This document shows, in pieces, positions 11,001 to 64,000 of a stretch of DNA of 64,000 nucleotides. Within the stretch, counting starts at the first letter, position 1, and each line of letters opens with the position of its first letter. The DNA comes from Tubulanus polymorphus (lineage: Eukaryota > Animalia > Nemertea), in NCBI RefSeq assembly GCF_964204645.1, contig NC_134031.1, forward strand, positions 15,363,807 to 15,427,806, in the 5' to 3' direction. A program made the translations under genes and the position numbers. The notes beneath the pieces were generated by a model. That model had not been told where the DNA came from. It did no database searches and was given only the letters and a program-made list of their open reading frames with translations.

Positions 11001-11162
11001 GTCGTGTTGTGCGGGATACTGACGACCGTCGAGGCGAACATCGAAGAGTACGGCGAGATGATGAAAACGCAGCGCCACTTCAACCGCGCGATGGCCATGC
11101 GATCGATTAAGCTCGGCATGAACACGCGGTTGATGCGCATGAAGAAGTATCCGCACACCTGA
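8015..11162 (+). CDS. TTC17-like TPR protein with N-terminal hydrophobic leader and C-terminal TM helix, ~435 aa, 3 exons
   Basis: Exons 8015-8436, 9155-9458 and 10581-11162 join in frame with GT-AG sites. Motifs STHWKLSDGRV (cf. TTC17 TTHWVVTEDGKI), DC...FDHLRGI and GNFWRIKGN...IECFRKAL TPRs; TM YTLFIILFLVMVVLCGIL. The start ATG is uncertain. Confidence 0.8.
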
Positions 11163-13084
11163 CGCGTGTGTGAGGATAAGAGGGAGAATGTCCACGTCGC
11201 GGTCGCTTCGTAGCAGCAGTAGCAGCAATGGCACGACTTTGTATGTAACTTAACCGGGTATCGCTAATGGATTAGCAGGCGTAGCATTTAGAATATTATT
11301 CATCTGGCCACCCCCTGAGTTTCATAGATGCAGGCTCAGTGGCGGATCTAAGGGGAGGGTGTAGGCTGCGAAAAAGTTGTTCCGAAATTTTATGAGAAAA
11401 TAGTAAAGCCTATACCGAAAGAAGTTTAAATTCATAAGCTTGAAATGTAATGAGATGTAAATGCGATAAGTGTTTTCCGATGAGCTTTCTTTTGGGGTGC
11501 ACTTTAATAATTATATGACATGTCTACCTGAATTAGACCCTAGATCCGTCACTGGGGCCATTTTAGAATTTGTCAGTTCTTTCCATGGAACATGTCTCAC
11601 ACTGTATGTCACCCAGGTTGAGGATCTACCCTCAGGGGTATTCTATAATGAACCAGTCTATGAAACCGGGCTCCCAGATCTTAACAATTGAATGACGTTT
11701 ATCTTTGTCGGGTTACCGTAATTTCCATTCCGATATTAGTGAATTTTGTTGATATTATTTCTCGTTTTTAGTTCGGCGCTAATAGAAATATTCAGTTATC
11801 AGTAGTTTAGATTTAGACTTTGATTGCCTCGGGACCGATCAATTTTCTCCTGGCCTGTCAGAGCGACAATGGATCGTCGCAACACTTGAATGGAGTGGTG
11901 TATGGTCAAAATATTTCGTCCGGGACATGCGGATCTGAGCCGAGTGCAGTCTACTGTAGGCTTACTGTCACGCCGACTTATGCGTTTAGTTGATTCGTTC
12001 GGAATGGTCACTTCTCTCGCGGCTGAGTTATAATCGTTTTAAGGATTTACAAGAAATATCGAAATTCCTTTAGAAACAAGATTAAATCGTGAGTTTTTGT
12101 TTGCGAAACCGTCGGACCGTAATTTTGAACTTCCATCGTTCGCCAATCCAGTTCCGGTTCTAGGATGAAATAGCGCGACCGACTTGTTTCTTATTATTTT
12201 CCCGAGTATTTCGTGCTTTCTCCGTGTTTATTCATTATCGTTGTTGTTGTTATTGTTGTTGATTTAATGTTAAAACCCACCGCGCTTCCTCAGACATACG
12301 ATGACGATCGTATTTATCATAATCGGAATTTGAAAGTATTTTCAGTCTAGAGAAATGAACGAAGAAGAAATCGTATTTTAGCCTATTTAGGAGCAAAGAA
12401 TTTAGATTTTTTTAACGATATAGAATGTACAAGGTCTGCCATTGCACTAATGCAATGCACTATGCTTACATATTTTACATTGTTTTAAAAAAAACAATGT
12501 CTAGACGACATGTATATTTGTACTGGTGTCTCGTCAGTATTAAATTTGTCTTGCGTGTGCTGCCGGAAACTCGATCGCGTGCTGTGCCATTTATCTATCA
12601 ATCATAATTCGCCGAATTCGTCGTTGAATTTTGACGCTTTTCCCTTGTGACGAACGAATGAATTTACCAAATATTTCTTCATATTTTCAAGTACCGTAGT
12701 ACGAAATAAAGAACATTATTAACACTCGTATATATGTAAATCTTGTCGATTTTTGCGTCTTTTTTACTCCATCCACAACGCGGTTCAACGGTTGCCGGTT
12801 AATTTAGACTCTTATCAGATTTTAAAGATAAGTCTATTTCCGATGTTAAACTCAACTAGAGTATCGGTATGAGGGCTGCGGGTGGCGAACTTCAGGACCT
12901 GTTTTGAGGAGAGTAAAAATTCTTTAATACCGTTGTACATACGGGAGTCCAGAGGATAAAAATGGATGATTGCTCCTCCAGAATAGAAATTTTGCCGATG
13001 ACTCCTAAAAGACTCAATGACTGAATGACATCGCATGTGACTTCTGTTGGTTCCTCGAGTCCCCATTCGGTAACTAATTACATC

Positions 13085-15930: not shown

Positions 15931-18900
15931 CTAAAATGTGACCCAACTAGTGTTCGTTTGTTGCGAGCTGAAAAAAAATTACGAATCAACATTTATCTAT
16001 AACGTTCGAATAAAGATGATTTCAGAAGTTATTATTCAGGACCCTACAGTTGTGAGTTTAAGTTAACTCTTGAGTTGAAATCAGTTCATTTTCAATGAAT
16101 TAACTCAGGACTGTGGAACTGGCTCCAGTACGGAAGAAGATCCATCCTTTCATTCATTCTTCATTTTTAAGTCGGGTGGCGGGTTTTTCACTAATAAAGT
16201 TTGAACGATGTTATTTATACAGTAAACTATGCGTTTTAGTTGAAACTTTGTAATGTATCCTTAGCCGTAGAACGAGATATTCGCTTTCCGACACGACTGC
16301 GGTTATTGCAATGTTTCTGGCGAAATGCATTAAATTAAAAATTTCAACGGGAACGCTCGAATAACCGATAATTTCATGAAGTGCACAATAAACAGCTTCT
16401 CATACAGGGTCCCTACGGATCAGTCATTCCAGAATTCAAGGACTTTTCAAGGTGTTTTCAAGGGGAATATTTAAGATTTCGAGTAGTGTATGCATCACTT
16501 TTCACAAGTTACTCTAGACTCCTCCTAAATTGGTATTGGTAAACCATTTAATTCAGTGGAATCTGTGTGTATAAAAGTCATATGACTACTAACTAGGTCT
16601 AAAATTTTCCAATTGCCAATTTCTTAAAAATGCAAGGAGTTTTCTAACACTTTTGGACATTTTGCTCAACTTCAAGGATATTCAAGGGCCTTGAAAAAAA
16701 AATTTTTTGTTTAGAAGGAGTTTTCGAAGAATCAAGGAGTCATAGGGACCCTGTCATAAAATACAAAAAATATACAAAAAATATACGGAAGCAGGGAAAA
16801 CAGGATAAAGTGCAATACAAATACGAAGTACAAATAGATGATTTTAAACTTTGAATTATCGGCTTAATGAATGTCTGTCGAAATATCTACCGGTATGCTT
16901 TGATAGCGGAGGAACGAAGCAGTGAATATAGGTTTTATCTATAGATTTTACTTACCTAAAAGCCACCTCTGATGCACAAGAGATAGACATTATATAAATT
17001 TTACGTCGAGGGTTCGTTAGAATGATTTTGAGACAGATGGAAAGAAACGTTAACTTATTTGATTCCGATGCTTTCGAAAACGCTAGTTGAAGAGGAGTGT
17101 TATCGGTTAAAGGTAGCTCACGTAACGAAAACAAGGTACTACTTACTTGGCAGACGCAAAATCGCCCCACACGTCGGTGGCTGGAGCCGCAGGTGCAGCG
17201 TTCGCCGCGCCAGGTGCATCCAAGTCTAACAATAAATCTATATTACTCTGAGATTGAACTGTTGGTTGCGGTGGAGCTGAAAAACGAAGACGTAACAAAT
17301 GAACACCCGACCAACACAAAATCGACGACTAAGCAAAAAGAATATTCGTTTACACTTCGGGTATAGAAAAAATCTTCAAAGATTTATGAATCACGCTAGA
17401 TTTCATTTATTTCAAAAAGGCAAAGGTACAGGGTCCCTACTACAGGGATCAAACATTCCTCTGGATACGAGGGGTTTTCTAGGAGTTTAAAGGAGAATAT
17501 TTCATATCTCAAGGAAGTATCAGCATCACTTTCATTATTGTAGACTCTTCCTAAATCAGTGCTGTTTATCTTGGTAAATCTATTTATTTGGTAAGCAAAT
17601 TCTTATCCTAGACCTACCCATAGAGCTCAAATCAAATTTGAGTTCTATGACCTACCTAACCTCGGTTTCTAATTTGACTACCGCTAATAGGGTCAACGAA
17701 AGTCCCAAAACTGTACCAATTTAGGCATAGTTTAATGTACAACTACAAACTAGACAAAACTTTCACAAAATTGAAGTAGGTTTGAAATAGATTCAGGCAT
17801 TTTTTTTCAAATGAAAGGAGTTCCGAGCACCTGTAAAGGCAAATTCCATTTAGAAGGAGTTTTTTAAGGACTCGAGGAGTAGTAAGGACCCTTTGGGGTA
17901 GTATTCCAAATAAGGAATAAATTTCCATCGTTAAATCTTAAATATCGTGAGTGTGACGTATATCATATATACTTCAAAGACTGTGACTCATCTTAATTGA
18001 TTTTGACACCCGCAGCAGCGTTCATTAATTATGTATACTGGTACTGGAAGCTGATCTGTGTATGTAAATAGGTAGCAATTTGTTTAGTGACATTTCAGAA
18101 TGTATATATTTAGAGGGTATATTAAGACTGACATTGATGAGAAACACCGTAAGGTAGGTTCGCCATTAATAAGACACTAGGAATATATCTTGTGTTGTGA
18201 CAATCTTATATAAAGAGAATGCCACAATAACGAAAAAATAAAGTCTGAAAAGTTTCCTTGAGCTGGTAGTTAATTCAATGTTTCAACTTTATTCTAATAG
18301 TCATCTTCAAGAATACTGAGATACAACAGAAATTATGAAATATATATTCAATCTAGGGCCCAGTTTTATAGACTGGTATTAACTTAGCTCAACTGAAAGT
18401 GAATCGAGTTATCTCTCTGGGTTAAAGTTAATACCAGTCTATAAAACTGGGTCCAGAACGTTGAAAAACCTACAGTTACTAGCTCAAGGAAACATTTTTG
18501 GACTTAATTTTTCGGCATTCTAGTGGGATTCTCTTTAAATTACAACGAGGTAGGAGTTAGTACCACTACCACAAAGGGTAGGGGGTCATCATCTCTGAAT
18601 TGGAAAATTCTCCCCCTAAACCGCATTTCCGTAAATACAATATTCACCTTGCGATTGGACAGTTGGTTGCTGACTGAATAGATTTCCTACGGCTGGTTGT
18701 TGGGGTTGCATCTGCGCGGCTGGTGCCACAGGATGAGGATGCTGTCGACTGGTCGCACCCGACGATGGAGGCGGTTTGATTCCTCCCGGCGGGGGTGGTA
18801 GGATGCCTATAGCACCTCCGGCTCCTGCGCTCGCTCGCGGACGAGCTTTACTAGTTCCGTTGCCAGACTTCGTGTGCAGGTTCAACTTAATAGTTTGACC

Positions 18901-20640
18901 CTCTTTAAATCCTAAATCTAATTTCGGTCCCGAATCTAACGTTGACTGAGTTTCTAAATCTTTCTCTTTTTTTAACCACCTGAAAAATGAAAACGCATCG
19001 AAAAATAAATCTTCCATCTTGAAACAGGTAGGTGAGCTTTTTTGTCTGGCCCCAGTTCCACAGTTGCGAATTAAGATTTGACCCATAGTTAACTCATTGT
19101 AAATGAACTAGTTTTAACTTATGAGTTAATACTAACTAACAGATGCTTCTCGACTCACTTAAAATGGTCTTGAAGACTAACGTTAAGATCGAAAGCGTCG
19201 CTACGATCTTCAAATCCAACACCGATGAAAGCACTTCGACCTGCCAAAAAAAAACAAATCTTGATTGTTGACATATTGACAATTAAAAGTTAATTTTTAC
19301 TGTGGTATTTATCCGCCGGTTATCTTTAACAAATATTGACCAACTGGCTCCTGACATTAGATACTTTATCTGATATCGGCGCGCCGCCAAAAACTGATCA
19401 TCCAGGACTTCACCTGAGATATTTCTAATTGAAAATAACTACAAACATCAGATATTTTACCAGCATACAAAATTGATCATCAACACTAAGCACTAAAATG
19501 CTGGACTCAGTTCCACAGTTGTGAGTTAGAGTTAACTCTGAGTTAAAGTTAGTTCATTTCAATGAGTTAACTCAGAGTCAAATCTTAACTCAGAACTGTG
19601 GAACTCGACCCTGAACGTCTGAAAGGGTAGTTGCAGCCTGAAAGCTAAGACCCCACCAGCGAGATTTTAACTCATAGACCAGAATATTCAAAACGCGGTA
19701 TCTCGACTCTCAGCCCCTCATACTACATACCTGATACATCTTTAATGCGTATGACAAAATATCGACTTGAATCTAGAACACTTTCGCAAGCGGTACTGGG
19801 GTATTCCTCAATGGGAGCATTAGCGAATAGTTCACCTGAAATATCGCAAATTAATCATTGAGAATTTCATCTACCGAAAAACCACATATCTCAGTCAGAC
19901 TTTCGACAGATATGAAGCCACTGTTCTCTAATTGTACAAACCTGAGGCTTTATCTTCAAGTTTGATGCTTAAATCTTTACCCTTAACGACTACACGCATT
20001 CGACCGGTCCAGTCAGGCTGATCTAATGACCAATCAGAGGCTCTAAAAAGTAAATAGAAATTTTGCTTTTATCGAAACAGCAGTTTTCGAGTGACGAATG
20101 ATTGGGATTGTGGGGCATGCTAAACGCTAGTTCATCTGAAATCAGAATCAAAGCTGCCTCAGTTACTCAGTAGGGAGCAGTTGCATTCACTATCGGTGAG
20201 TGCCGAGTGACAAGCTGGTTCGAAATCGAGTCCTTCGGCTGCAATAAAGAATGCGGGCATTGGACCACAGTTCAGAGGCTGGCGGTGCCCTTGTTAGATG
20301 AACATGATCTACAATAGAATCTAGTCCTGGCAAACCTAGATCCTAAAGAAGTAAAGCAAAACAAACTAACAAACATGTCATATAAATTCATCATTGGTTG
20401 TAAAAATACAGTGACACCAACCCTGGCAAGTGAAATGCGGAAGTGATTTCGGTAGCAATTTTCGCCAATTATTCCGTTATCTTAAGGATAACTATCGGGT
20501 GAATAATCAAAAACTAGGTATTAAATTGAAGCCCCGTTTGTGCTCTTTTACCTGTAGCCTCTGTTCGTAGTTCTCGGGGGTATACGGTAGACGAAAACCT
20601 CATTTTTCACGCACACAACGCTCTCGTAATCCACCGACAT
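15931..20640 (-). CDS. NECAP: Adaptin ear-binding coat-associated protein (NECAP1/2), 291 aa, 7 exons
   Basis: Exons 20640-20552, 20042-19942, 19835-19731, 19240-19159, 18979-18648, 17276-17147 and 15967-15931 (876 nt). PHear domain ([18 protein letters not shown]; [10 protein letters not shown]; [28 protein letters not shown]), [19 protein letters not shown] and terminal WVTF*. Confidence 0.95.
16405..16753. mobile_element. MITE with CAGGGTCCCTA termini (second, longer copy at ~17429-17892)
   Basis: CAGGGTCCCTAC...ATAGGGACCCTG. Internal TCAAGGA-type subrepeats are shared by both copies, which lie in NECAP introns. Confidence 0.6.
18211..18538. mobile_element. Kolobok-like MITE (AGAGAAT...ATTCTCT|TTAA) with a nested ~100 bp hairpin MITE at 18356-18454
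   Basis: ~65 bp inverted ends AAAGAGAATGCCAC...TTTCCTTGAGCT / AGCTCAAGGAAAC...GTGGGATTCTCTTTAA. Related copies or ends at ~6275 and ~41630-42018. Confidence 0.55.
19503..19612. mobile_element. ~100 bp hairpin MITE family with GGGCCCAGTT...AACTGGGCCC-type ends (PIF/Harbinger-like)
   Basis: CAGTTCCACAGTTGTGAGTTA...TAACTCAGAACTGTGGAACT. Related elements or ends near 14586, 15051, 16038, 18356, 19049, 21736, 23975, 24694, 29152 and 60624. Confidence 0.6.
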
Positions 20641-20934: not shown

Positions 20935-23900
20935 ATGACGCTAAATCCACTGGCAAATCCTAAAGGAGTGAAGCTGGTTTGTGAATTGTGTCAGAAACCT
21001 GCTTTTATTCAGTGCACCGATTGTAGAGTCACGTATTATTGGTAGGTTTTAACGAAACCAATATCTTTCTTCTCTATAGACTCTGTCAGTGACACTCCAG
21101 TGACTGTGTCACTACGTGTCTGTGACTGTGTATTACGCCTACGGTACCACCAGAAAACGAAATTGGGAGCGACTCCAGTTAAGTTGTCCTGGTTTTAACC
21201 TAACTTAACCAACACTATACCTCCTCAACTGGATGAACGGACGACCCAGGCAACAACTGCCGATTAGTTCCGGCGTATGATCGGCCTGCGCTCGGACTAA
21301 AAACCCAGCGCTCTCCTCCCAGTTCCAAGTGCCTCATCAGGACAAACTTGCAACTGCTGTTACAGATACAGATGATACTCTATTCCTTAATCACATAAGC
21401 GCCACACAGGTGACAGCTTTAACTACCTACAGTAAGATCCAAAATTGTAATATCAATTAAAAATCCTCCTTTTTCTCAATTCAGTGGCGTGGAGCATCAG
21501 AGAGCCGACTGGTTGGGAATTCATGAGAAGATATGTCAGTTACTCATACCGTTAAGAACTGCGACACCTTTCATCGCCTCAGAGGAAGATCGACAAAAAC
21601 GTCGATTTCAAATCCTTGAAAAACAGGTTCGTTTTTAAACTGTTCTTAGACTTAAAATTATTCACATGTGAAAATTAAAACCAGGGTCCAGTGCAGGCTT
21701 AATTCCATTAAAGTGGTCCTTAAAACTATGAAACTGGGGTCAGTTGTGCAGTCATGGCTTAGGTTTAAGACCAGTCTAAAGCCATTCTGGTTCTATGGAC
21801 AATCAAACAACTTCATTCTAAAACAAATATTTAAATTTAAATCATGACTATATGCAACTGGGCCCGTTGTAATTTGTTAGATTGGTTATGTAGATGGACT
21901 TAAAACTGGTCTTAAGCTAAATCTAAGCTTCTACTGACCCAGATTCTTTTTTGAATTCTCCATTCTTTATTCTTCAGAGGCAGATGATCGACCTGACGCG
22001 AACTACCGGTCAGAAATTATTATTCGAAAGCAAACATGAAGAGGCAGTTCCTGCGGCTATGCAGTCGTTACGATTTGCTATCGATGTTCACGGTATCGCT
22101 AGCATCGAATTAGTTCCTTCATATCTCATACTTGGAGAGGCAAGCATAGGTATGTTTTTAAACACTATTTTCTTAAACACTACTATTTTCACACTATTGC
22201 TAGTTTAAATTAGTGTAAAATATAGTATATGATACCTATTCGCCATGTATGTATGCAGTATAAATGATGTATGATTACAAGCAAAGGAAAAAATACTTAG
22301 TTACATACATGCCAATGGAGGCTGTGTCCCATAGGCATCCAAGCACCCAGGTATGTTTTTAAAAGCAGTGTTCACACTATTGCTAGTTTAAGTTAGTGTG
22401 AAATTTAATATATATGTGTAGTATCTATTTGCCATGTTTATATGCATTGTAAATAATATATATGTATGATTACAAACAAGGAAAAACATATATATAGTAA
22501 CACACATACATGACTGGATGCTTGGAAAGCCAATAGAGGCTGTGTTCCATAGGCATCCAAGTGCAGCACCTAAGTATGCTTTTATAAGCTGCGTTCACGC
22601 TATTGCTAGTAAGTTAGTCGTAACGTTTAGAATGTTCCTGGATCGCTCTTTTTAGTCAGTCTAAATTTGTTCTAAAAGGGATTTTTTGCTAGCGTTCTAC
22701 CATAACCAGTCGGTTGTGGGACAGGTGACTGCAAGCTTCGTCCTACCCTTCCACGGTGACAGGTGGTAATTATAATCTCAATTGCTGAATTCAATTCAGG
22801 TTAGGGATCATTCATTTATTACGTACGCATAAAATTTGAATTTTTCAACCCCCCTCCCCCTCTGTTCGTGTAATCGGCCATTTTTTAATATACATTAAGC
22901 ATTACAGTACGCAATTGCACTGACCCCTCCCCCTCCCCTAATGCGTACATAATAGATGATTGACCCCTTGGAGATGGGCATCTACCATGTTGCAGGACAT
23001 AGAGTCTTCGTCCTGCAACAAAGAGGATGTATTTAAGTTGGGTCCTCTTCTGGTATGCAGAGACTGTGCCCAAGGACTCTCACTTGCTCGATCAAATCAA
23101 TGTCCTGTGCAGTTAGCTCAGTTGGTTGAGTGGAGGACTGGGAACCAAGAGGTCCCTAATTCGAAGCTACGTACTATGCACTGCTGAGTTAGTCAGGTTA
23201 TGAGCCATAACAAGAAGGCCCTGGCCGTTTCTTAAGACCCATTAGGGTTACACTGTTACTTGCAGTTGGGACATAAAATCCTTCTAAACTAAGGTCTAAA
23301 CTCAATGGGCTAGTTTTGATCAACTGTTGGAATAGTGCAGGTGCATTGGAAGCAATTTTTGAATGCCACAGCCAATTGCCAATTTTTGACAGTTTCTAAT
23401 ATTGTCGCGGCGAATTTACTTCAATTTCGTCAAAAACGTAGTAGAGAAAGAAAAAAATTTCATTCAGTAAATTATTGCCGCCACTGCAGTTGCTACGGTT
23501 CCAACACCAGTAGTGTAAACCCTCAAATTAAAAACGTTCTGTGTGAACGCACCTATAATTGCTAGTTGAGCTGAACGAATTAAAGCAAGGTTTAAACGAA
23601 CGTCAAATATTGTTTGCTTCTCCCAGGGTTAGATCGTTTGAATCAAGCGGAACAATACTTGGCACAAGCTCAGTGGACCGTTTTGAAAACGCCCGAATGT
23701 TCAAACGCCATCAGATCGAAGTTGTACCGTAACCTCGGTTTATTGTACGCCGCAAAAGGCGACTTCTCCGAGGCTCTGAGATCTTTAGCCGATGATGTGA
23801 GTACAAACTGCTGTTTATAGAATAGTGTTAGAATTAACGGAAATCAGAAGATTGGATATGAAAGTTATTCGACCTTCCATTCAACTTTTTAGGTGAATTA

Positions 23901-25237
23901 GCAAAAATTCATAAAGCGGATGAAAAATACATAAAGAGATACATATTTTTGCAATTAGCTTCTGAGCTGGAACCAGGATCCAGTTCCAGGTTCAAATTCA
24001 TTTTAGAGTGAAAACATTGAAAGTAAACTACAGTGGAACCTCGTTACAGCGAACTTCATGAGACCAGAAAAAATGTTCGTTATATACGATAGTTCGTTAT
24101 ATCCAGTATAAAATTTATCAAATAATGTCTTACTTGGGACAAAATTCTATATTTGTTATGTCCGAAGAATCATTGTATCCGAGTTCGTTGTAACGAGGTT
24201 CCACTGTAATTCTAATTTTAGAGTCAATCGTGGAACTATGTCCAGTTGTTTTTTGACTGATACTAACTTCATCTGCAAGCGGCAATTGATAAACTTTTCA
24301 ACTGCTGCTGAAGTTTATAGTGTTATTTTCATTCAGATTTGGTATGCCTCGAATGAATTCGGAAGCGATGACATTCGAACGTCGGGCGGCTATTTTCACA
24401 TGGCTAACGTTTTCTTGCGGAAAGAAGATATGGAAACGGCAGATTCATTGTACAAAAGGGTGAGTTGTTTTACTTAATGACTAGAGCCGACTATTTCGAC
24501 GTTGATGGTTGATTCATTGAATTTATGAAAACTTCTTTCTCGTTCAGGTGTTAGATATATGGTATGATCATTTGCTTAAGATAGTGAAGATGAGGACGAA
24601 AACACCAATCGCTCCGAAGGGAGTCGGTTTGGTGGTCGCCGAAATAAATCAAGAACCGGATATTGGTTTAGGTTAGTTTTAGGTCGTTCGTTCTGGGGTC
24701 AGTTCCTCAAAGTTGCTTTAAGATAACCAATGGATAAATATAATAGTAACAACAAACGTTTAATTGTTACTATGTCAATTATCCACTGGTAAACTCTAAA
24801 TATTTTAACTCTTTTATTTTAATTTTTCAGATGAAGCGCAAGAAGCCGAAGCAAAAAAAGTTTTGAACTTGATTCAGGAAGTTTATGGACAGAATAACGA
24901 GGTGACCAAAGCGACTCTGATTAAAGTTACTCATGCTCTGGCAATGCTGTATTTCGTTCTGCGGGATGGAATCAAAGTAGGTTTTCTCCGAGCAAACTTG
25001 AAACAATCACGCGTAGCCTTCTTAATTAACTGATGAGCGTTTGAACGCTGACGCGTAAATGGAACAAAAATCTAATCGGAACAAAAATAGTGGTTTAAGC
25101 CGGTACATTTTCTTTTCCAGGCTGTAGAATTCAAAAATGTGGCGATTCGCACTTGTCAGGATTTTCCCGAAGACGACCCCGTAGCAAAAGACATTTCATC
25201 GTTTGATCGTTTCCTAACGAACGCTTCTGGTATTTAG
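20935..25237 (+). CDS. ZMYND12: Zinc finger MYND domain-containing protein 12, 366 aa, 8 exons
   Basis: Exons 20935-21041, 21485-21626, 21978-22149, 23627-23796, 24337-24459, 24548-24671, 24831-24976 and 25121-25237 (1101 nt). N-terminal PLANPKG..CELCQKPA..QCTDCRVTYYCGVEHQRADW.GIHEKIC MYND finger followed by TPR-like helices. Confidence 0.93.
22803..22968. mobile_element. MITE with GGG(A/G)TCATTCAT...ATGATTGACCCC ends and internal CCCCTCCCCC motifs
   Basis: Imperfect terminal inverted repeats AGGGATCATTCATTTATTACGTACGCAT / ATGCGTACATAATAGATGATTGACCCCT. Confidence 0.6.
23102..23290 (+). mobile_element. tRNA-derived SINE (degenerate)
   Basis: A-box TAGCTCAGTTGG and B-box-like ATTCGAAGC head. 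No acceptor stem, and non-tRNA body follows. Confidence 0.45.
24031..24206. mobile_element. pogo/Tigger-like MITE (TA TSD)
   Basis: TA|CAGTGGAACCTCGTTACAGCGAAC ... GTTCGTTGTAACGAGGTTCCACTG|TA. A second copy in opposite orientation lies at 41761-41931. Confidence 0.85.
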
Positions 25238-31279: not shown

Positions 31280-34200
31280 CTACACAAGTGTCGGAGGTAC
31301 AACTTCCACCAAGCCATTCAATCGTTTTAAACCGTTCAGTCTTTCGGTTGTTGACGTATCCAATTGTCTGTCGTCTTTCCCTTTCAGCCAGTACGTCATA
31401 ACACTATTCTTCCCCTGAAGAAAAAAACGCGAGGCCTTGGCTAGTATTGCTAATCGTGATTAGATAGAAAGATAAAGCAGAAAAAATATACCAAGGTTTC
31501 ACTCTTTATCACAAATAAATTAGACATACTGGTACGGTGTTAGTAAGAGTAATTCTTTTGTGACAACGTTCGCTAATGAAACGTTTGGTACCTCGTTAAT
31601 GGTACATACACAATACATCACCAATAATGAGGCAATAGATCCGTTCGTCCTCGTATCAATTTTCAAACAAAAGGGAATCACGGAATTACCGCCTTTTTGT
31701 TTGAAAGCACATTCATTTGGGCTCTATTGATTCCACGGAACAATACATGTTTTTGCGGTTTCGATTCGTCATTTCTTTTAAAGAGTGGAATCGTTTTAAA
31801 AGTCTGTATTAACTGTGTGGTTACTTTTATTCAAAATAAAAACTCAATGGCATGTGTGTGCTAATTTTCATGTTGCATCGCGGTGCGCAATTGATTGGGA
31901 ACGAAAAATCAGTGTCAGAGGCCGAAGCGATGTAGATGATCCATAAAGAAAAATTGATCATACCTTCAAGAAAACCTCTCCTCTCGGTTCGAACATATAG
32001 CGTCCGATGTTGCAGAGAATTCTGTGCACGGTTTCGGACACTTGGATACAGTTCGTCTGCGACGTGTACATCAGTGTCAAGGCCGTATTCACCGTGTCGC
32101 CGAACACGCAGAAGTTGCCGGTGCAAGTTTCGCCGAGCATACCGGTCACCACAGCACCGCAGTGAAATCCGCAACGAAAGCTAACCGGCGCGGAAGACAA
32201 CGGCGAATCACCGGTCGGTAGTTTGTAGTTGAGGCACGCGTCGACGAGTTCCAGAATAAGGCAAGCGATTCGATTCACGTGCTTTTTACCGATACGTTTC
32301 GTCAGCCCGGACATGCAGACGACCGTGTCGCCGAACATCTGCAGCTGATAGATGTCCGGCTTTTTCTTCACGATATCGTTTAGTGTTTGGAATAGATTCG
32401 ACAACACGGTCAGCGTTTCGTGACATTTCGACGGGTCGTTCATCACAGAAGTTAGATTGTTTAATTCGAGCGCCATAACGGCTACTGATCGGTGTTCCTG
32501 CGGATCGACGGCAAACCCGTCAGTGATCCGTTTCACGATATCTCGCGGCAGTGAATTACAGAACATCCTTTGTATGCTCATTTTGCTAGCTTCGATTTCT
32601 GTCGTTTTCTCTTCGACTTTATCCTCTAATAACGACGTGTACAATTCCATCTCTTCCATCATTGAATCGAGCATGTTCTTTTTCGTGGGGTTCGCGTGTT
32701 TGATCATTTTCGCCATTTGGTCGAAGCTCGGACGTGTCGCGGGATCGTCCGCCCAAGCTATCTCCATCAGTTGTTTGACCTGTATCGGTGTATCGTCATC
32801 GGGTTCGGGTCGTAGGTTATTGTTCACGATTGCTTTTAGTACGTCATCGGCGTTCATCGTATCGGCGTGTTCGATATACGGATCATTCCTGCTGAATATC
32901 TCGTATAGGATTATCCCGAAACTATACACGTCAAGCGACGACAAAGGCACGATGTCATAACCAGCTCGTATCGCCTCAGGAGCCGTCCAGAATTCGCGAA
33001 ACGCAGCTTCGTGTTTTCCAATATCATCGGCGGACGCTCGTATCGCCAATAGAGGGCTCCGTTTTCGTTTCGATTTTATGGTCGAGTATATTTGTACGTA
33101 TTCCCAATCGGCAACTCGCACGGTCCAATGGGAATCGACCAGACAACAGGCCGACTTTAGATTTCCGTGCACGATATTGTGTCCGTGCAAGAATGCCATG
33201 CCCATCACGATATCGGACGTTAACGAAAACTTTATGTCTAGGTTTAAATTGAACTTTTCATCTCGTAGGATTTCTAGAATTTGTCCCTTCGAACAGTAAT
33301 CACTGACGACGTAATGGTCGTTTTCGATTTTGGCCAGTCCGTAGAATCGCAGCACGTTCATGTGATTTATCGAATCGCGCATGTTCAATAACAGTCGTTT
33401 CGTCGCCGTCTGCATCGGTTCAAGGTCGGATAGTTCGATTAGCCGAAATCCAATCGTGTAACTCTTCCATTTGCCCGGCCATTGTAAAACCTCGCGGATC
33501 TTTTCGGTGCTGCATTCGACCATTTCTTGAAAGCTCTCCGAATCGCCGATGGAACTGAACGATTTAAGAGATTTTCCCGAACGGCTGCCCATCTTACGCA
33601 CCGTCGGCGAATAGTAGAACAGCACCTCTTCGATGGGTATGTCCCATTCGTTACTGTTTATCATCTTCCAAACTTTGTAGCGCTGAAACACGATATAGCC
33701 GACCAGGCTGAATATGACGACGAACGTCAGCGGGATGAACACGGCTACCGGGATGACCCACGTTTCGGCTACGTAATCTTCTTCTTCCTTTTGCGTTAAC
33801 ATAAGCCGATAAACGTTTTCCCCGCGGCACGAAATATTCTTGAGAATCTTTTGTATGATTCTTTCCGCGATACGAGGACTCATCGCCGTCATGTTGTGAG
33901 CGATGCAAACATCTTTGGCGACGTCGTCCACCAGGAACCATTCGATGAATCTGACCAGTTCGGTGATTATCTCGCAGGCGTCGTAGCCTTTTTTATGAAT
34001 GAGGAAGTACGTATAGCTGGATATCGGATACGAGTGAGCTCCCGGTGGGTCGACTATATACACGTTTAGGTTACTATCGAAATCGTCCATGAAATCGTCC
34101 ATAGCATTCTGTACCTCGGTCGGGCCGCTTTCAATGAAGTTTCCCGCCTTGTTACCGATGGCGGCCGTGCTTATGCCGGCCTCTTTTGCGTCCGATGGCG

Positions 34201-37200
34201 ACAGATACCCGATCGTGTACCTGATTGACATCAGTATACCGGAAACTCCGCGCGTCCGATGTCCGTATTGGTATATGACGCGTTTCTCCCAGTGTATCGG
34301 CTCCCACGTCGTTTCGTTCAGTCCTTGCGAGAACGAACCTTTCGTCCGCTTCCACGCCTGGCTAAACGAACCCAGCGCTCGCGTGAAGGTCGATGTCGTG
34401 CCGGACTTATCGGCGCGAACGACGACCAAAATCTTCTCGTCGGGCAACGTGAAATTCGGATTCGTTCGCTGTAACGACGCGTGGTTCCAGTTCAAAATAG
34501 TCCCGTTGAATATTCCGACTATTTGATCGCGATTCAAGCGTAATTTTTGGCCCTTCGGAATTCCTGGCAAGTTGTATCCCAAAACGATGGCTCTGAAAAA
34601 GACGGAAAGATCGTTTTTAAGGGTTATTGAGAAGATATTTCGCGCGTCATCGCCGACAGCCGCACGAGAATGACTTTACAATACCAATTACGACGTGTTA
34701 AAACTGAAAACCGCACAAAAGCTATGAAAAAGTGAAGCAGGTGCCTTTGTAACGATCGTATGTTTTACATTTATTTTTTTAATCGGAACAAAAGGTGATT
34801 CGCCACGTTCAGTAAACGCTGAAACAACCATCGATCACCATACTAACGCCGTTACGTTGAATTTTATAGGATTTCGCAACGACGCGCCAGCTAATTAATT
34901 ATGCCGGTTTCATACACCGGCAACTGTGTTCATTCAATAATCGACGTACGCTCTAACGCCAGAGTAGGTAACGCTGCTGAAAAACACTGCATTAAACTAT
35001 ATGATTTACGCAGTTGGAACGATATAAATAAAATGTCCAACTGTGTCGTTTCACCTGCTTACATATAAGTCAAAATGAATTGGACAATAGCTATAGTGTA
35101 CAGATGTTATTGATCCGAGAACTTGAAAGACGGACTCAATATTTCTAAGAGGATTTTATTGCATTGTATTAAATTAGGTCCATGGTTTTATTGACAAACG
35201 GTGTGTATAATGAACATTGAATTTTTTTCGAATTTAGAATCTAAACGAAGTTGAAACGATTTTATCAGCGGCTTTGCTCGATCGAAAAGTTCGTCGATGT
35301 TTAAAGCTGTCTACCTATTTATGGTTGTATTTCTGACCCGTACCGACTGCTGTCTCATTAGAGAATGTGGCCTTCGCCCGGCGCAGTTCTGGCTCATATC
35401 GGTGTGTACTGAAATATATCCCCCTTACGACGATGCTTATTGGAAACACGAGAAACGTGTTGTTTGCGAAAAGTGATCTATCACTAATAGGCTGGATAAA
35501 ACACGTCATGTTGTCAGCAGGGGTGGCACAATTTCCACTATTTCCACTGCCTTTCAAGTGCCGCGTCGTCAGTGCTTTTCATCTGCAAAAAAGTGATATT
35601 AATAGAATGTCCTTTGACATCCCGTTGTTTTTTTTCAAGTATTTTTTCACAGTTTTTAGCCGATTGTATTTTACAGCGAAATAAAAATGATTGCACGCGT
35701 GCGTGAAGGCGAGCATCAATCGGCGAGGGATGACTTGCAACAGCAGACGGTCTCATTCGATGAAATTAAGTAGTTCTTAGATCAGCGAATGACAAGAAAA
35801 TATAATACCCCTCATTATCAGTATAGTTTTCCAAGTTCAACGTAGTTGAGGTTTAGTCTAAGCCTGATGAATTATAGAGACAGGACCTGCGGGTTTGCAA
35901 TCTAATTCCATCGTCAGTTAATACGGGAATTATGGTTACTTTGCTGAGACAAATTTATCTTTAAGGATTACACTGATTTTAAACATTTCTTGCTGGGTAG
36001 TCATGTAATGGCTTCTCCAACTGCCTCGTTTCACATCTAGGGGCCAGTTTCTTTTGGCGTTTTCCTGCGTAAGCCTTTAAAATCTATAAAACAGGCCCTG
36101 GGGCTGGTTTCGCTAATCAGACGACAACAATCTTTCCATTTTCCAAGAATGAGAGAGCATATAAAGCCATCAACTTAGATAATCAAAGTATAAATCGTTA
36201 TTTCCGCGCATGAGTCATATTTTCGAACTTATCGATCGGATCAGGCTATTAACGGTCGAAAATGAATTCAATTGATTTAACTCGAAACAGTGGCGGGAAT
36301 TGCAGACACCGAAATCTACGTATACCATTCGCATACGCGATCATAAAAAGAGAACTAATCTAAACCAGGTAAACCGAAATACGTCAAATGCATGCAACTA
36401 GCAATTAGTTCGTTCGCTCGATTTGTGCTAATGATTGATGGATGGAAATCACCCCACATACACACGTATACTCACTACATACGAACGGTAATACATAGAA
36501 TATTTGAATTATTCATTAGGCCCATATAATAATATATTTCAATACTATGACGATGACTAATAAATTAGTATCGCGCATGTCATTCGGCAGATTTTTAGCC
36601 TGAATACGGAGTTGTTATATCACCGCCGCATCAGTCGGCGCCGCTTTACTAATTATAACGTTGTTGGTTAAACTCACTCAAACGCCGGAACTTTGCTTGT
36701 TGAACGAGTCGTATTACGCATAAACAGCGGAATCAAACCGATGGAATTAATAACGTCAATTTCGACTAATTGATTTTTCGAGAGAGAGAGAGCGAGAGTT
36801 TGTCTGCCCCAGCCCTATACCGAACTGGGCGTTAAGAGTTTAATTTTTTTGTGTTTGCTGTGCAATTGAGAAGTTGTGGAAATGAATGATTAATTCTGAA
36901 TTGCGACGGTGAACAATTTCCAGCCATCGCCTGCATGATGGCCCAAGTTCAAGTTCAAGTTTGAATTTATTTCATGGAAAGCATATGAAAGGCTCTATAC
37001 AGAGAATAAAGGAAAGACAAAACAAACAGCAATAAAATTTACCATTTGTCCAACAAGCGCAATTATAAAAAGAAGCCGAGAAAGGAAAGTAGCTATCTGT
37101 GTGGGCCAAGTAAAGCCTTAAGGGGCCGCAGCCTTCCTCATCCCTGTAAGTATCAAAGTCGTAACAACAGGTTCCTAACCCGGGCCTTGAGAGTTAGCCT

Positions 37201-38569
37201 TCTCCGGGTGAAGTACTCGAGAAGTGTTGGAATGAATGATTATGTCACGAAGGTGAATTTCTTTTTTAATAGAATGCATGACGTTATTCAACAAAGAATA
37301 GGCCTAATGATATTGAAGGTTTGCTTACTAGGGATAATGCATTTAGATTGATAGCAACAGAGTTATAGGCTGGGGGTAATAATACCAAATTGGCGCGCAT
37401 CTGAACCCACTCAGGTTAGGATCCCGCGCTATATAAATGTCAATCATTATTATTATTATATGATAGCAACACCGAAAGGATGATTGTAAACATAAGGTCA
37501 TGTACATTATTGACATTTAGATACACAGTAAGATTAAGAGAACACGAGAAAACTAGAGTTCAAAACCAAGAAAACGACGGTGAGCGAGTTTCGGCGATAC
37601 GTTCCGGAAATTAGTTGCCTGAACAGGTAAAGAAATTGTACGACTGACTGTTGATCCCGGTGCGTCTTCAAATCGATACAGAGCTACAGGAATCATGAAG
37701 TAAAAACCAATAGTTGATATAGAGAGTTTAGTTTCCATCAGTTTCGGGGTTTATCTAAACCCCCATCAGAAAGTAGAACGATAGACTTTTTATACCAACT
37801 GTAAGACTTTACTTGTTAACTCTAGGTCATACGGATCAGAAACTTTGTAACACAACAAATCATTCGAGTGAAAATCCAACGAGTTCGGATGGGTAATCCG
37901 TATAGATGAAATCGTTAACGACAAACTCCAGGGAACCGGGCCCACACCCCAGATTATCGCCACAAGACAAGACCATTTACGTGTTGATACCGGTTTAGAT
38001 TCGAGCCCAATTTTAAAACTCTAGATTAACGAAGAACTGAACCAAACAAGTCACAACACCACTACAGGCAACACAATTACGAGAGAAATCCCACAATAAA
38101 TTCAGTTAAAAACGAAAAGCTCTGTATTAAAATGATTATATTTCGAGCAACGTTTCCGCTAAATGCCATTAGCCATCATCAGGCGTACTGATGGAAAATT
38201 CACCTTTATTGGCGGTCATGCTATTATGGAGTACGATACTTACCCTGCCATAGCCGGTATCTCTAGAATTTCAGATTTCTCAGCTAGATTCCTGTCATCC
38301 AGTCCGTTGTCGGACCCGGCAAAATCGACCTTAGAAGCTCGAATATCTCTGACGCCTGCCGACGATCCTTTAACTGTGTAACTCATGAGCAGGTCGATGT
38401 GCTTACTGCGATACAACTTGTATTGTTCGATCCAGGAACTGTAAACCTCGGCCGGGAACGAAGCCCCGGAACCCGCGATGGACACGACCGGTCTAGTTTC
38501 CGGCAATACTCGGCAAGGAAATAAAGATAGAAAAACAATAAGTCCGGTAGTTACCGATGCGTTCCTCAT
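31280..38569 (-). CDS. Receptor guanylyl-cyclase-like protein with a PstS (phosphate-binding protein) ectodomain, 1029 aa, 3 exons
   Basis: Exons 38569-38244, 34592-31964 and 31414-31280 (3090 nt, GT-AG, in frame). Signal peptide; PstS motifs GSGASFP, GSSAG, VDFAGSD, NP...LP...I.VV.RADKSGTT, IGY, YPISSYTYFLI; TM WVIPVAVFIPLTFVVIFSLVGYIVF; kinase-homology domain (HGNLKS, WTAPE, DVYSFGII, RPSF); cyclase domain (FGDTVNTA, RGEV.LKGK..TYWL). Confidence 0.92.
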
Positions 38570-43515: not shown

Positions 43516-45831
43516 CTAAACTTGTCCGTTTGGTTCACATAGAATCGGACGCACGTATGAACTTAGATTGCATTGGTATTCGAAATCAACGCTGTAGTCC
43601 TCAGCAGTCTCACCGTCAACGTTCAACATTGAACAGTATTTACCAATCTTAGTTTTTCTCCAATAGTAGAAAGCTGTCAAACAAAAATATATAAATGACA
43701 CAAACTATGATAAATTACGCATAAAATGTCAATTTGATGCTCCACCCTTTCGTTGTACGTTGTACAGCGAGGGTGTAAATTCGGATTTGTTTGGCAGCAA
43801 TTATGATGCTAAGTCTGACAAGAAAATGATACCTTGTTTCTCCTTTCTGCTGAGCTTTAGAGTTGACCCGGCCAGTCACCTTATTTACCCTGTACATTAC
43901 GTTTTAAAACATCATGTTCAAGCTTACAATAAACAGACATGAAATGAACTGATGAACAAGTTTTATTGCGATTTACAAAATGACCCGGCCGATTAGGAGA
44001 AACAGGGTATAATTTTTATCCTAAATCTTCGTTCGTAATACATATCAGATTCACTATCAATTATTCAAATGTTTAAGACTACATTTCATGGAATAGCATC
44101 CATCAACGTCTTCATTAGTTAGTTACCTAATCGTTGGCGGTAGCTATTATAATCGGATGGGCTTATACCAACATCCGATCGTGAAACTAAACCACAGACA
44201 GGATACTGACTGAGGTCTTTACTTACTTGGATTGGCGCCGAAGGGACGGACAAAGTGCCAAATAGCTTTCCTTTTGAGAACGGCGTTGGCATTTGCCGCC
44301 AGATCAACCAACGACGAACCCGATGGACAATTGTTTACTGCCTGATTATGCGTGACCTTATTCGTGTCTACGGAGAAACACCACGACATCACACGGCTGA
44401 ACCCATCGAGGCATTGAATATCTGAAATTTGAGAGACACCTCACATATTCACTGACAGGGGCGCATCTAGGATTTTCCGGGGGGGGGGGGGGTGTCCAAT
44501 GAGAAAAAGAGCAGTTTTCATGAAACACCACGTACTCCGGACACTTCTTCAACATTTTAGGGGGTTTCATACGTTGAAAAAAAATATTGTAGGTGGAAAA
44601 CCTTGGACAAAGAAATTTTTGGGTGACATTTTTGAAGGCACTTCAAAGTTGAGGGGGATCCGGACACCCAGACTTCCCCTGGATCTGATGACGTATTGAG
44701 CTCGCATTCAGGGCCAACTCCGGTTTTGGTAGCTAGTCGACTGGTGGTCGGAACTAATAACCGAACGCACTATAGTTCGGTCGTAACGTATTTCACAGTG
44801 TCGGCCATCTTGGAAATGGGTCGGAACTACAGCGATCGTGCTCAATCCCGTGGTCGACCATTTCCGGACCATAGTTCCGACAAACAGATATTCGGTAACC
44901 GACTAACTCCGATAACCGAAGTTCGCCCAGGTCGTCAAAAGTGAATATTGTATTATACGCAAATCTACGGTGGCTGATTTGTATGGTGGCTGATTCGGGC
45001 CATACTAAAAAAATGCAACGATAAACAAATTTTCGCATTGGCCCGTTTTTGGTTTTCTCGCGCAAGAATTAAAAAAAGTTTGGTTTTCTCGCGTGAGAAT
45101 TCAAAACTTTTTTTAAAATTCCGCACGAGAAAACAAAACATTTCGGTTTACTCGCACGAGAATTCAAAAAGTTTGGTTTTCTCGCGCGAGAATTCGAAAC
45201 TTTTTGAATTCCGCACGAGAAAACAAAACATTTTCGTTTTCTCGCGTGAGAATTCAAATTTTTCATCTAGCTTCTAGGCAGTCAGAAAAAGTTTTTCAAT
45301 CCAAAATGTTTTGTTTTCACGCGCGAGAAAATAAAAAAACGGGCCAATGTGAAATTTTTTTTAACGTGTTTTATAGCCGTACAGAGAAATTTTTCAGTAT
45401 GGCCCGAATCAGCCACCGCACAAATCAGATTGTGTTCTATGAAATTTCTATCGCTAATTTTACTTACTTGGATTTTCGTAGATCGAGAATTTCTTATCGA
45501 TCTGTATTATTCCAGCTGGTGCCGTCGCCGACGACCGCGTAACATACAATAAGCCTAGGTTACCCTGACCCCCGTGCTGGGTATCTTTGGCGTACGAAAA
45601 CCCGTTACATCGCTGCGCATTTTCGGCACACTGCGCCGCGCACCGGATGCGGGTAGCTTTCGGCCCGCTAAGCGCCATGAATATGTTCCCGGTGACGTTC
45701 TGCGGGTCGTAGACTTTCCCGCGAAAGGTTCGGGCGAATTCCGCGGTATTCGAGGTCGCCGCACAATTAGTATCCGACGAGCGACCGACCAATATTAGCA
45801 AACTTGCGATATATCTTACTACTAAAAACAT
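43516..45831 (-). CDS. Secreted PAN/apple-like + C-type-lectin-like protein, ~238 aa, 3 exons
   Basis: Exons 45831-45468, 44421-44227 and 43673-43516 (both donors A|GTAAGT, phase 1). Signal peptide; CAAQCAENAQRCNGFSY (PAN-like); CLDGF..VMSWCF...A.NNC....LV and C....C......ILCE (CTLD cysteine framework). Confidence 0.7.
43829..44009. mobile_element. MITE with ATACC(T/C)TGTTTCTCCT ends
   Basis: ATACCTTGTTTCTCCT...AGGAGAAACAGGGTAT. Partial copies near 7038 (reverse), 29094 and 48997. Confidence 0.55.
44984..45418. mobile_element. MITE with internal ~30/60 bp tandem subrepeats
   Basis: TIR GGTGGCTGATTCGGGCCATACT / AGTATGGCCCGAATCAGCCACC; inner TTGGCCCGTTTTT / AAAAAACGGGCCAA; repeated TTTTCTCGCGTGAGAATTCAAAA units. 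Confidence 0.8.
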
Positions 45832-51945: not shown

Positions 51946-54582
<2,637 letters not shown>

Positions 54583-61119: not shown

Positions 61120-62094
61120 ATGAACCACACCCAACAACTAGTCCCGCGGGCCGTGACTCCTCGCTTCACCGTCGGCTTCTACGCTCTGCGCGTACAAGCG
61201 TCTTCGCAGATAGACGGAAATGTTTACTTTTACTTGTATTGTAGCTTGAATTTTGTGAGTCTGTGTCTCGGATTTATCGGCAATATCTTTATCGTTTGCG
61301 TCATGTTGACGGAGCGTCTGCGGCGACGATCTTACAGTCGTTTCTTCTTTTGCCTCGCGCTGTCCGACACGGTTATTCTAGCCTATCAACTATGTATCTT
61401 CTTAAACGTAGTCAGCTATTACTTTTTCGGAATCGGAATCATTCCCCTAAACGGTTACATATCCTGTTGTTTCTACGAGTACACGGTAACGACGTGTACT
61501 TTCAGTCCGTACGTTCTCGTGATCATCTCAACAGAAAGACTGAGCGTAATTCATTTCCCGTTCACCGCTAAACGATTCTGGACGCTGAAACATAATTCAG
61601 TTTGGATGATAGGGCTGCTCTTTGTCATATGTTCGCTGTATAGTTTTGTCTGGTGGGAGATCGCTTACGTCAGAGATATGGGATGTATATTCACGTCACC
61701 AATCGTGTATTCGTATTACATGTCAATCGGACCGGCCATCACGGCATTCATTCCAACCTTTATTCTGATGCTCACCACGAGCGCTATAATCATTTCATTG
61801 CGCACCAATAAAATCAAAACCCTCAAATCTTCATCGGCCTCGAAACAAGCGACCGTTATGATTTTGGCGACTTCGATATTTTTTCTCATTACCATATGCC
61901 CGCTGTGTACGATAGCCGTACTAATGACGCTCCATTCCGGGGACAGTTTCAACGAATCGTTCAATGTACCGTACAAAATAGCTAGCACCCTGTTCAGTCT
62001 GAATTACTCCGCCAATTTCTATATCTATCTATTAACCGGGAAAGAAGTTCGTGATTCCGCAAAGCAGCTTATTTGCTGCACGAAAAGTCGGTGA
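61120..62094 (+). CDS. Intronless class A peptide GPCR, 324 aa
   Basis: TM1 GFIGN, TM2 LALSD, TM3 end ERL..I.FP, TM5 FIP, TM6 FL...CP, TM7 NYSANFYIY, C-terminal CC. Confidence 0.9.
   Translation: MNHTQQLVPRAVTPRFTVGFYALRVQASSQIDGNVYFYLYCSLNFVSLCLGFIGNIFIVCVMLTERLRRRSYSRFFFCLALSDTVILAYQLCIFLNVVSYYFFGIGIIPLNGYISCCFYEYTVTTCTFSPYVLVIISTERLSVIHFPFTAKRFWTLKHNSVWMIGLLFVICSLYSFVWWEIAYVRDMGCIFTSPIVYSYYMSIGPAITAFIPTFILMLTTSAIIISLRTNKIKTLKSSSASKQATVMILATSIFFLITICPLCTIAVLMTLHSGDSFNESFNVPYKIASTLFSLNYSANFYIYLLTGKEVRDSAKQLICCTKSR

Positions 62095-62936: not shown

Positions 62937-64000
<1,064 letters not shown>

What the first reader, a model, noticed from the sequence alone, without database searches (positions are those of the whole stretch)
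31280..38569. Candidate animal phosphate receptor: bacterial-type PstS domain fused to a receptor guanylyl-cyclase backbone
Seen in the sequence: three exons join into 1029 aa comprising signal peptide, ~340 aa ectodomain, one TM helix, kinase-homology domain, coiled-coil and cyclase domain. Established knowledge: the ectodomain follows E. coli PstS motif by motif. The phosphate ligands T10/F11, S38, D56 and R135-x-D137-x-S139-G140-T141 correspond here to GSGASFP, GSSAG, FAGSD and RADKSGT. Characterised animal receptor GCs use a type I (ANF-receptor) Venus-flytrap ectodomain. PstS is instead a type II periplasmic binding protein of the prokaryotic Pst ABC transporter. Inference: a high-affinity phosphate clamp has been recruited as the ligand sensor of a single-pass receptor, giving a possible extracellular Pi-sensing pathway, probably through horizontal transfer plus domain shuffling. 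I know of no functional characterisation of such a fusion but cannot check databases.
Basis: partly seen in the sequence, partly recalled or inferred. Interest (0 to 1): 0.95.

Follow-up and report, generated by a model that had tools for sequence, protein, structure and literature searches.

The report
Animal receptor with a phosphate clamp
A ribbon worm gene makes a cell-surface receptor whose outer part is a bacterial-type phosphate clamp; the family runs through molluscs, annelids and a tardigrade, I found no paper on it, and it is a directly testable candidate for an animal sensor of outside phosphate, although this copy's own signalling enzyme looks broken.

Summary
Confirmed. A real, spliced three-exon gene of Tubulanus polymorphus (1029 aa): signal peptide, PstS-type ectodomain, one TM helix, pseudokinase, coiled coil, cyclase fold. 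The fusion lies inside one open exon, and intron 1 is seen joined in a transcript-like contig. The ectodomain passes the curated PstS cut-off, folds as PstS (Z 38; sulfate, molybdate and tungstate binders 14-15) and keeps all eight phosphate-ligand positions (one T to S). It belongs to a family of at least 63 sampled proteins in nemerteans, molluscs, annelids and a tardigrade. Ten literature searches found no description; the nearest precedent is the Acanthamoeba PBP-kinase-cyclase receptors. Two corrections. (1) This copy cannot work alone as a guanylyl cyclase: it sits in an old clade of 31 rows, none with a full active site, while paralogues (Owenia, Lineus, Paralvinella) are intact. A note on this same window (s1-516509) said so too; the scan had no note on other DNA. 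(2) Direct bacterium-to-animal transfer is rejected for the donors sampled: the clamp belongs to a eukaryote-wide clade also used on fungal and protist receptors. Best reading: a phosphate-binding, non-catalytic receptor subunit. Binding and signalling are inferred, not measured.

The parts
38244..38569 (-). Exon 1 (coding part): signal peptide and first third of the PstS-type ectodomain
38498..38569 (-). Predicted signal peptide (about 24 residues; cleavage site not computed)
   Evidence: hydropathy 2.58 over 10 residues, like 2.2-3.4 in eight relatives; stretch unspliced in run X2
38453..38473 (-). GSGASFP motif, equivalent to E. coli PstS T10/F11
38354..38368 (-). GSSAG motif, equivalent to E. 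coli S38
38309..38323 (-). FAGSD motif, equivalent to E. coli D56
34593..38243 (-). Intron 1, 3651 nt, phase 2, GT..AG; same position in Lineus, Owenia and Paramacrobiotus
31964..34592 (-). Exon 2, 2629 nt, one open frame from ectodomain to cyclase
33767..34592 (-). Rest of the PstS-type ectodomain, with two near-invariant cysteines (probable disulfide) and five N-glycosylation sequons
34397..34417 (-). RADKSGT motif, equivalent to E. coli R135, D137, S139, G140, T141
33683..33757 (-). Single transmembrane helix
32705..33490 (-). Kinase-homology domain (pseudokinase: R for the VAIK Lys, HGN for HRD, DWE for DFG); the best conserved part of this subfamily
32522..32674 (-). Coiled-coil / signalling helix
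31964..32506 (-). Guanylyl-cyclase fold with a degenerate active site (E,Q,D,N,C,N,T for D,E,D,R,C,N,R)
31415..31963 (-). Intron 2, 549 nt, phase 0, GT..AG; same position in Lineus, Owenia, Paramacrobiotus; not tested with reads
31280..31414 (-). Exon 3 (coding part): last cyclase strand, short tail, stop

Best explanation
The gene encodes a plasma-membrane receptor for extracellular inorganic phosphate that has no cyclase activity of its own. Steps: (1, shown) it is spliced and has the full single-pass architecture; (2, shown by sequence and model) the ectodomain is a PstS clamp with the whole phosphate site; (3, inferred) phosphate closes the two lobes, as in PstS; (4, inferred) closure turns the juxtamembrane helix and TM helix of a dimer, as in receptor GCs; (5, sequence-based) its own cyclase site is incomplete, so a homodimer makes no cGMP; (6, inferred) the signal leaves through the strongly conserved pseudokinase and juxtamembrane part, either by tuning a dimer partner (an intact PstS-GC paralogue or another receptor GC) or by recruiting a cytoplasmic partner. 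The family arose in an early protostome or earlier animal by joining a eukaryotic PstS-type sensor module to an animal receptor-GC intracellular half; intact paralogues would be true phosphate-gated guanylyl cyclases.
For: Ectodomain scores 212 bits on the PstS equivalog TIGR00975, cut-off 205; model pLDDT 93, best structural matches are 13 phosphate-binding proteins (Z 38-21) before any other (sulfate-binding protein 14, ModA 14, TupA 15); all 8 ligand positions kept; R-x-x-x-S-G-[T/S] kept in 58 of 63 family rows and 29 of 31 in this clade, ligand columns among the top 9-31% of ectodomain columns; nearest prokaryotic relatives sit in real pst operons with ABC permeases, one with PhoB/PhoR-type and PhoU genes. 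In this clade mean identity is kinase-homology 48%, ectodomain 42%, cyclase 22%; in intact members cyclase 61%, kinase-homology 33%. None of 31 clade rows has E+C, one has N+R. Lineus and Paralvinella each have an intact and a dead paralogue. Intracellular half matches GC-A best by sequence and fold.
Against: No binding or signalling data. A conserved site could hold a structural phosphate or a phosphate ester. A micromolar clamp (E. coli value, my own knowledge) would be saturated in body fluid, so it works as a sensor only at the body surface or with lowered affinity. No intact paralogue was found among named mollusc proteins, and I could not search the Tubulanus genome for one. This copy keeps an acid/acid/Arg half-site, as do 7 of 31 clade rows, so some catalytic contribution in a heterodimer is not excluded. 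Expression evidence is one transcript-like contig from one study, with no tissue.
Confidence: 0.55

Rival explanations
1. Catalytic heterodimer: this chain gives the metal and pyrophosphate-binding half (Glu819, Asp865, Arg916 in P0001 numbering) and an intact paralogue gives the guanine-reading and transition-state half, making one working site, as in soluble GC alpha/beta. Phosphate then directly gates cGMP synthesis.
For: Acid/acid/Arg half kept in both nemerteans, chiton, limpet and abalone (7 of 31); coiled coil and cyclase fold retained; intact paralogue in the other nemertean, Lineus.
Against: First Asp is Glu and the following GFT loop is lost; 24 of 31 clade rows lack the half-site; cyclase is the least conserved domain of the clade, 22%, unlike a true catalytic half.
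Confidence: 0.18
2. The clamp binds another phosphate-bearing ligand (pyrophosphate, polyphosphate end, sugar phosphate, nucleotide, phosphopeptide) or holds a permanently bound structural phosphate while a peptide ligand binds the dimer surface, as with the Venus-flytrap domains of natriuretic peptide receptors.
For: Borrowed bacterial binding folds in animal receptors often change ligand (own knowledge); animal-specific conserved surface features: an insertion after the motif region, invariant Trp residues and a cysteine pair; many paralogues per species suggest varied ligands; D137 equivalent is changed in freshwater snails and a leech.
Against: All eight direct ligands and the D137 salt-bridge partner are kept across paralogues and phyla; the PstS pocket encloses the ion fully (own knowledge), leaving little room for esters.
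Confidence: 0.15
3. Not a signalling receptor: a membrane-anchored phosphate scavenger or decoy that concentrates phosphate for transporters or mineralising surfaces, with a vestigial intracellular half.
For: Both catalytic domains are dead in this clade; algae and Naegleria have stand-alone or anchored PBP proteins.
Against: The pseudokinase is better conserved than the ectodomain in the clade (48% against 42%), which a scavenger would not need; no Pst permease partner is known in animals; neighbours are unrelated to phosphate.
Confidence: 0.08
4. Artefact: bacterial contamination, mis-assembly or a wrong gene model.
For: PstS-like 'DING' proteins reported from eukaryotes are of disputed origin (PMC7922408 appears under that search; the dispute is my own knowledge).
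Against: One open exon carries ectodomain to cyclase; a DNA contig of run X1 spans 32700-37094 without differences and intron 1 is spliced in X2; orthologues with the same introns in three phyla; animal neighbours (GPCRs, tubulins, aquaporin).
Confidence: 0.01

Closest known systems
Bacterial PstS (TIGR00975; E. coli 1ixh/2abh, M. tuberculosis PstS-1 7dm1)
   Same: Fold (TM-score 0.86-0.89 by target, rmsd 2.7-3.1; Z 38), all eight ligand positions, passes the curated cut-off; 29% identity to E. coli.
   Different: Tethered by a C-terminal TM helix to a signalling tail; glycosylation sequons and a cysteine pair; no ABC permease; split by a spliceosomal intron.
Animal receptor guanylyl cyclases (GC-A/NPR1, GC-C)
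   Same: TM, kinase-homology domain, coiled coil, class III cyclase in the same order; best sequence and structure match (intact Owenia paralogue E 1.6e-113 to GC-A).
   Different: Ectodomain is a type II phosphate-binding fold, not the ANF-receptor flytrap; this copy lacks the full catalytic set; most of the protein is on one 2.6-kb exon.
NIT-GCs (receptor GCs with a bacterial nitrate/nitrite-sensing domain; bioRxiv 10.1101/2023.08.02.551600, PMC7400543)
   Same: Invertebrate GC family that uses a prokaryotic small-ion sensing domain; many paralogues in marine worms.
   Different: Different sensor domain and ligand; the Platynereis study, which surveyed cyclases of 45 metazoans, has no mention of phosphate, periplasmic or PBP domains.
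Acanthamoeba castellanii receptor cyclases (67 proteins; PMC4053784, Additional file 1, section 3.3) and similar giant-virus proteins
   Same: [quoted passage not shown] Top Atlas look-alike of the Owenia paralogue is such a Discosea cluster.
   Different: Two Ser/Thr kinases flank a fungal-type (IIId) adenylyl cyclase, EGF domains present; here a single pseudokinase and an animal IIIa guanylyl cyclase, so an independent fusion.
PstS-domain receptors of fungi and protists found here (Endogone, Calcarisporiella, Plasmodiophora, Parvularia with 7tm_3; Andalucia with cyclase; Fabomonas with kinase and cyclase; Chromosphaera multi-TM)
   Same: Ectodomains form one clade with the animal ones (97/97); Andalucia and Mucoromycota are nearest (97/91, 95/84); ligands largely kept.
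   Different: Other output domains; Fabomonas kinase-cyclase is only 24% identical to the Owenia one (147 bits against 384 to GC-A).

Membership tests
PstS phosphate-binding proteins | Type II periplasmic binding fold of the PstS class | tested here: met
PstS phosphate-binding proteins | Phosphate ligands T10, F11, S38, D56, R135, S139, G140, T141 (and D137) | tested here: met
   T10 is Ser in the whole animal family
PstS phosphate-binding proteins | Score above the curated TIGR00975 cut-off | tested here: met
   212.2 against 205 bits; below the cut-off of the narrower PRK10918 model
PstS phosphate-binding proteins | Part of a PstSCAB ABC transporter operon | tested here: not met
   eukaryotic gene, fused to a receptor tail, no permease nearby: PstS-like domain, not a PstS transporter subunit
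PstS phosphate-binding proteins | Measured selective phosphate binding | not testable with these tools
   needs purified protein
Receptor guanylyl cyclases | Signal peptide, ectodomain, one TM, kinase-homology domain, coiled coil, cyclase | tested here: met
Receptor guanylyl cyclases | Intracellular half closest to animal GC-A/GC-C type | tested here: met
   by best hit, no tree with other receptor GCs was built
Receptor guanylyl cyclases | Complete catalytic set (2 Asp, Glu, Arg/Cys, Asn, Arg) able to act as a homodimer | tested here: not met
   E,Q,D,N,C,N,T in this copy; met in 11 of 63 family rows
Receptor guanylyl cyclases | ANF-receptor (type I) ligand-binding ectodomain of NPR/retinal GC/speract receptor, the names given by RefSeq | tested here: not met
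   no such Pfam or fold match
Receptor guanylyl cyclases | Ligand-stimulated cGMP synthesis | not testable with these tools
   needs a cell or membrane assay
NIT-GC | NIT domain | tested here: not met
   no NIT match in Pfam
Acanthamoeba/giant-virus PBP receptor cyclases | Two kinases flanking a type IIId adenylyl cyclase, PBP-like-2 plus EGF ectodomain | tested here: not met
   one pseudokinase before a GC-type cyclase, no EGF
Direct bacterium-to-animal horizontal acquisition | Animal sequences nested with a prokaryotic group to the exclusion of other eukaryotes | tested here: not met
   p-AU 0.0008 and 0.008; prokaryote sampling limited to 26 rows

The most novel reading that the evidence does not exclude
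Protostome animals have a dedicated cell-surface receptor family for extracellular inorganic phosphate, with catalytic (phosphate-gated guanylyl cyclase) and non-catalytic subunits, built on an ancient eukaryotic PstS-type sensor module that fungi and protists also use on GPCR-like and cyclase receptors. It would be the first animal receptor with a dedicated phosphate-binding domain, and would point to a eukaryote-wide, overlooked class of phosphate receptors.
Probability: 0.5. Interest if true: 0.88.

Novelty: new variant of a known kind. Interest (0 to 1): 0.76.

Why it matters
[quoted passage not shown] This family gives a concrete candidate with a known binding chemistry, known knock-out residues and, in the intact paralogues, a simple read-out (cGMP). 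It is hidden in databases under names such as retinal guanylyl cyclase or natriuretic peptide receptor. It may bear on chemosensation in seawater and on phosphate control in shell-forming molluscs (inference). No vertebrate or insect member appeared among the named hits, so it does not answer the question for mammals.

Tried and rejected
Joined spliced model: left out; I searched exon by exon by reference, and used the stored database record P0001 (RefSeq model, same except the first 21 residues) where a whole protein was needed. Contamination or mis-assembly: rejected. RefSeq N-terminus without signal peptide: not favoured, though a minor splice form is not excluded. Nesting of animal ectodomains inside protist/fungal ones: seen in the best trees but a tree with non-animal eukaryotes held together is not rejected (p-AU 0.23), so vertical descent against transfer from a protist or fungus is undecided. 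Whole-protein family tree did not finish; replaced by a quick tree on ectodomain to kinase columns, leaving the cyclase out. Synteny with Lineus and Owenia loci: nothing convincing. Sigma-70 promoter scan is irrelevant to an animal gene. Ten literature searches found no paper on the animal family; subscription journals are mostly missing from that library. No contig that I took for human was met.
Full report
Observation. The window is from the palaeonemertean Tubulanus polymorphus: the exon-2 ectodomain piece matches a RefSeq protein of that species at 100% (P0001, named retinal guanylyl cyclase 2-like). The gene has three coding exons on the minus strand, 38569-38244, 34592-31964 and 31414-31280, summing to 1029 codons plus stop, with GT..AG introns. 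Scanned exon by exon, exon 1 carries PBP_like_2 positions 10-91 and exon 2 carries positions 94-265 followed by a kinase and a cyclase domain in one frame. The fusion is therefore in the DNA itself. Run X2 has a 2919-nt contig that joins 38244 to 34592 and has almost no intron cover, while X1 covers the intron as plain DNA. The runs are not labelled RNA or DNA and come from one study, so this is one piece of evidence. Intron 2 lay outside the 6000 letters allowed and was not tested with reads. The joined spliced model was not typed or searched; stored record P0001 served for whole-protein steps.

N-terminus. P0001 starts at an upstream ATG and removes 38554-38509 as a 46-nt intron, which deletes the hydrophobic leader.

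Ectodomain. Both pieces hit only phosphate-binding proteins in the PDB. Aligned to E. coli PstS, T10, F11, S38, D56, R135, D137, S139, G140, T141 correspond to S, F, S, D, R, D, S, G, T. The domain scores 212 bits on the PstS equivalog, cut-off 205. Its model (pLDDT 93) matches 13 phosphate-binding proteins at Z 38-21 before any other fold relative; sulfate, molybdate and tungstate binders score 14-15. That these residues are the phosphate ligands, and that D56 excludes sulfate, is established knowledge of PstS.

Family. Searches found the same architecture in nemerteans, chitons, gastropods, bivalves, annelids and the tardigrade Paramacrobiotus; P0041 comes from assembly GCA_000485595.2, which I recall as Priapulus caudatus but could not check. 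No deuterostome, cnidarian, sponge or insect member appeared among named hits; many rows are unnamed, so absence is not shown. The two intron positions are shared by Tubulanus, Lineus, Owenia and the tardigrade, so the gene is at least as old as the protostome ancestor. The R-x-x-x-S-G-[T/S] ligand motif is kept in 58 of 63 rows.

Intracellular half. It matches GC-A best by sequence and structure. The kinase domain is a pseudokinase throughout the family. At the seven cyclase positions D,E,D,R,C,N,R this copy reads E,Q,D,N,C,N,T; 11 of 63 rows are intact, among them Owenia, a second Lineus gene and a Paralvinella gene. On a tree built without the cyclase columns, the window gene lies in a clade of 31 rows (SH-aLRT 100, quick tree) from nemerteans, molluscs and annelids, none intact. 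In that clade the cyclase is the least conserved domain (22%) and the pseudokinase the most (48%); in intact members the order is reversed (61% and 33%). Seven of the 31, including this copy, keep an acid/acid/Arg half-site, which leaves a catalytic heterodimer open. I had noted the degenerate site before seeing note s1-516509 on this same window, which says the same.

Origin. PstS-type domains also sit on fungal and protist receptors: class C GPCR-like proteins of Endogone, Calcarisporiella, Plasmodiophora and Parvularia, a cyclase of Andalucia, a kinase-cyclase of Fabomonas, a multi-TM protein of Chromosphaera. In a careful tree of 49 ectodomains of known origin, animal rows form a clade (99/98) inside a eukaryote clade (97/97) whose nearest outside rows are two proteins from real pst operons. 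Forcing animals with E. coli-type PstS or with those two proteins is rejected; holding non-animal eukaryotes together is not. Rows of unknown origin were left out, rows were chosen by likeness to the animal query, and branches are long. The simplest reading is one old acquisition from bacteria by early eukaryotes, with the module reaching animals from a eukaryotic source and being joined to an animal receptor-GC tail; the Fabomonas and Acanthamoeba kinase-cyclase receptors look like separate fusions.

Mechanism. Shown: gene, splice 1, architecture, intact phosphate site, incomplete cyclase site, conservation pattern. Inferred: phosphate closes the clamp, closure is passed through a dimer to the pseudokinase, and this subunit tunes a partner rather than making cGMP (0.55). 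Rivals: catalytic heterodimer (0.18), another phosphate-bearing or peptide ligand (0.15), scavenger (0.08), artefact (0.01). That the ectodomain binds phosphate at all I put near 0.85.

Novelty. Ten searches found no paper on the animal family; the Platynereis cyclase survey does not mention it. The concept has a precedent in Acanthamoeba (PMC4053784 supplement) and an analogue in NIT-GCs. It is a new variant of a known kind, with interest coming from the open question of phosphate sensing in animals and from being easy to test.

Noticed in passing
window:38576-38740 (- strand): Several upstream ATGs; two (38618, 38576) are out of frame and open a short ORF that overlaps the main start, the second only 7 nt upstream in good context. 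Could limit translation, or feed the RefSeq leaderless form if the 46-nt intron is used.
   Followed up: partly
window:51946-63929: Two beta-tubulin-like genes facing each other (about 51946-54582 on +, 62937-63929 on -) with a single-exon rhodopsin-type GPCR (61120-62094, +) between them.
   Followed up: no
window:26773-29000 (+): Aquaporin (MIP) gene ends tail to tail with the receptor gene; no synteny found in Lineus or Owenia loci.
   Followed up: partly
window:821-1939, 9000-11700, 18616-19086, 21951-24477, 45460-45831: Other neighbours: a single-exon GPCR, a TPR protein, pieces that look by memory like NECAP and ZMYND12, and a short secreted cysteine-containing ORF without Pfam match. 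None is phosphate-related.
   Followed up: no
window:37359-37457 and 38073-38192: Short high-copy repeats inside intron 1 (depth up to 1500 in run X1, many loose ends).
   Followed up: no
L001, L002 and many ENA/Logan proteins: The 2.4-2.7 kb exon from ectodomain to cyclase is typical of the family in lophotrochozoans (many database fragments start and end at its borders), unlike the intron-rich vertebrate receptor GC genes I recall; possible trace of a retroposed origin or of intron loss. The tardigrade and P0041 genes have more introns.
   Followed up: partly
P0070, P0126, P0092, P0144: Early-branching fungi and protists have class C GPCR-like receptors (7tm_3) with a PstS clamp instead of the usual flytrap, one fused to an RGS domain (Parvularia): candidate phosphate GPCRs, no paper found.
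   Followed up: partly
P0081, P0168, P0103: Freshwater snails (Bulinus, Biomphalaria) and the leech Helobdella change the D137-equivalent residue, and the leech also S139 and D56: possible affinity shift or loss in fresh water.
   Followed up: no
L004:8723-12603: Unnamed compact-genome eukaryote contig with a two-clamp receptor followed by kinase and cyclase ORFs; its ectodomains branch near the animal/fungal group in the quick tree.
   Followed up: no
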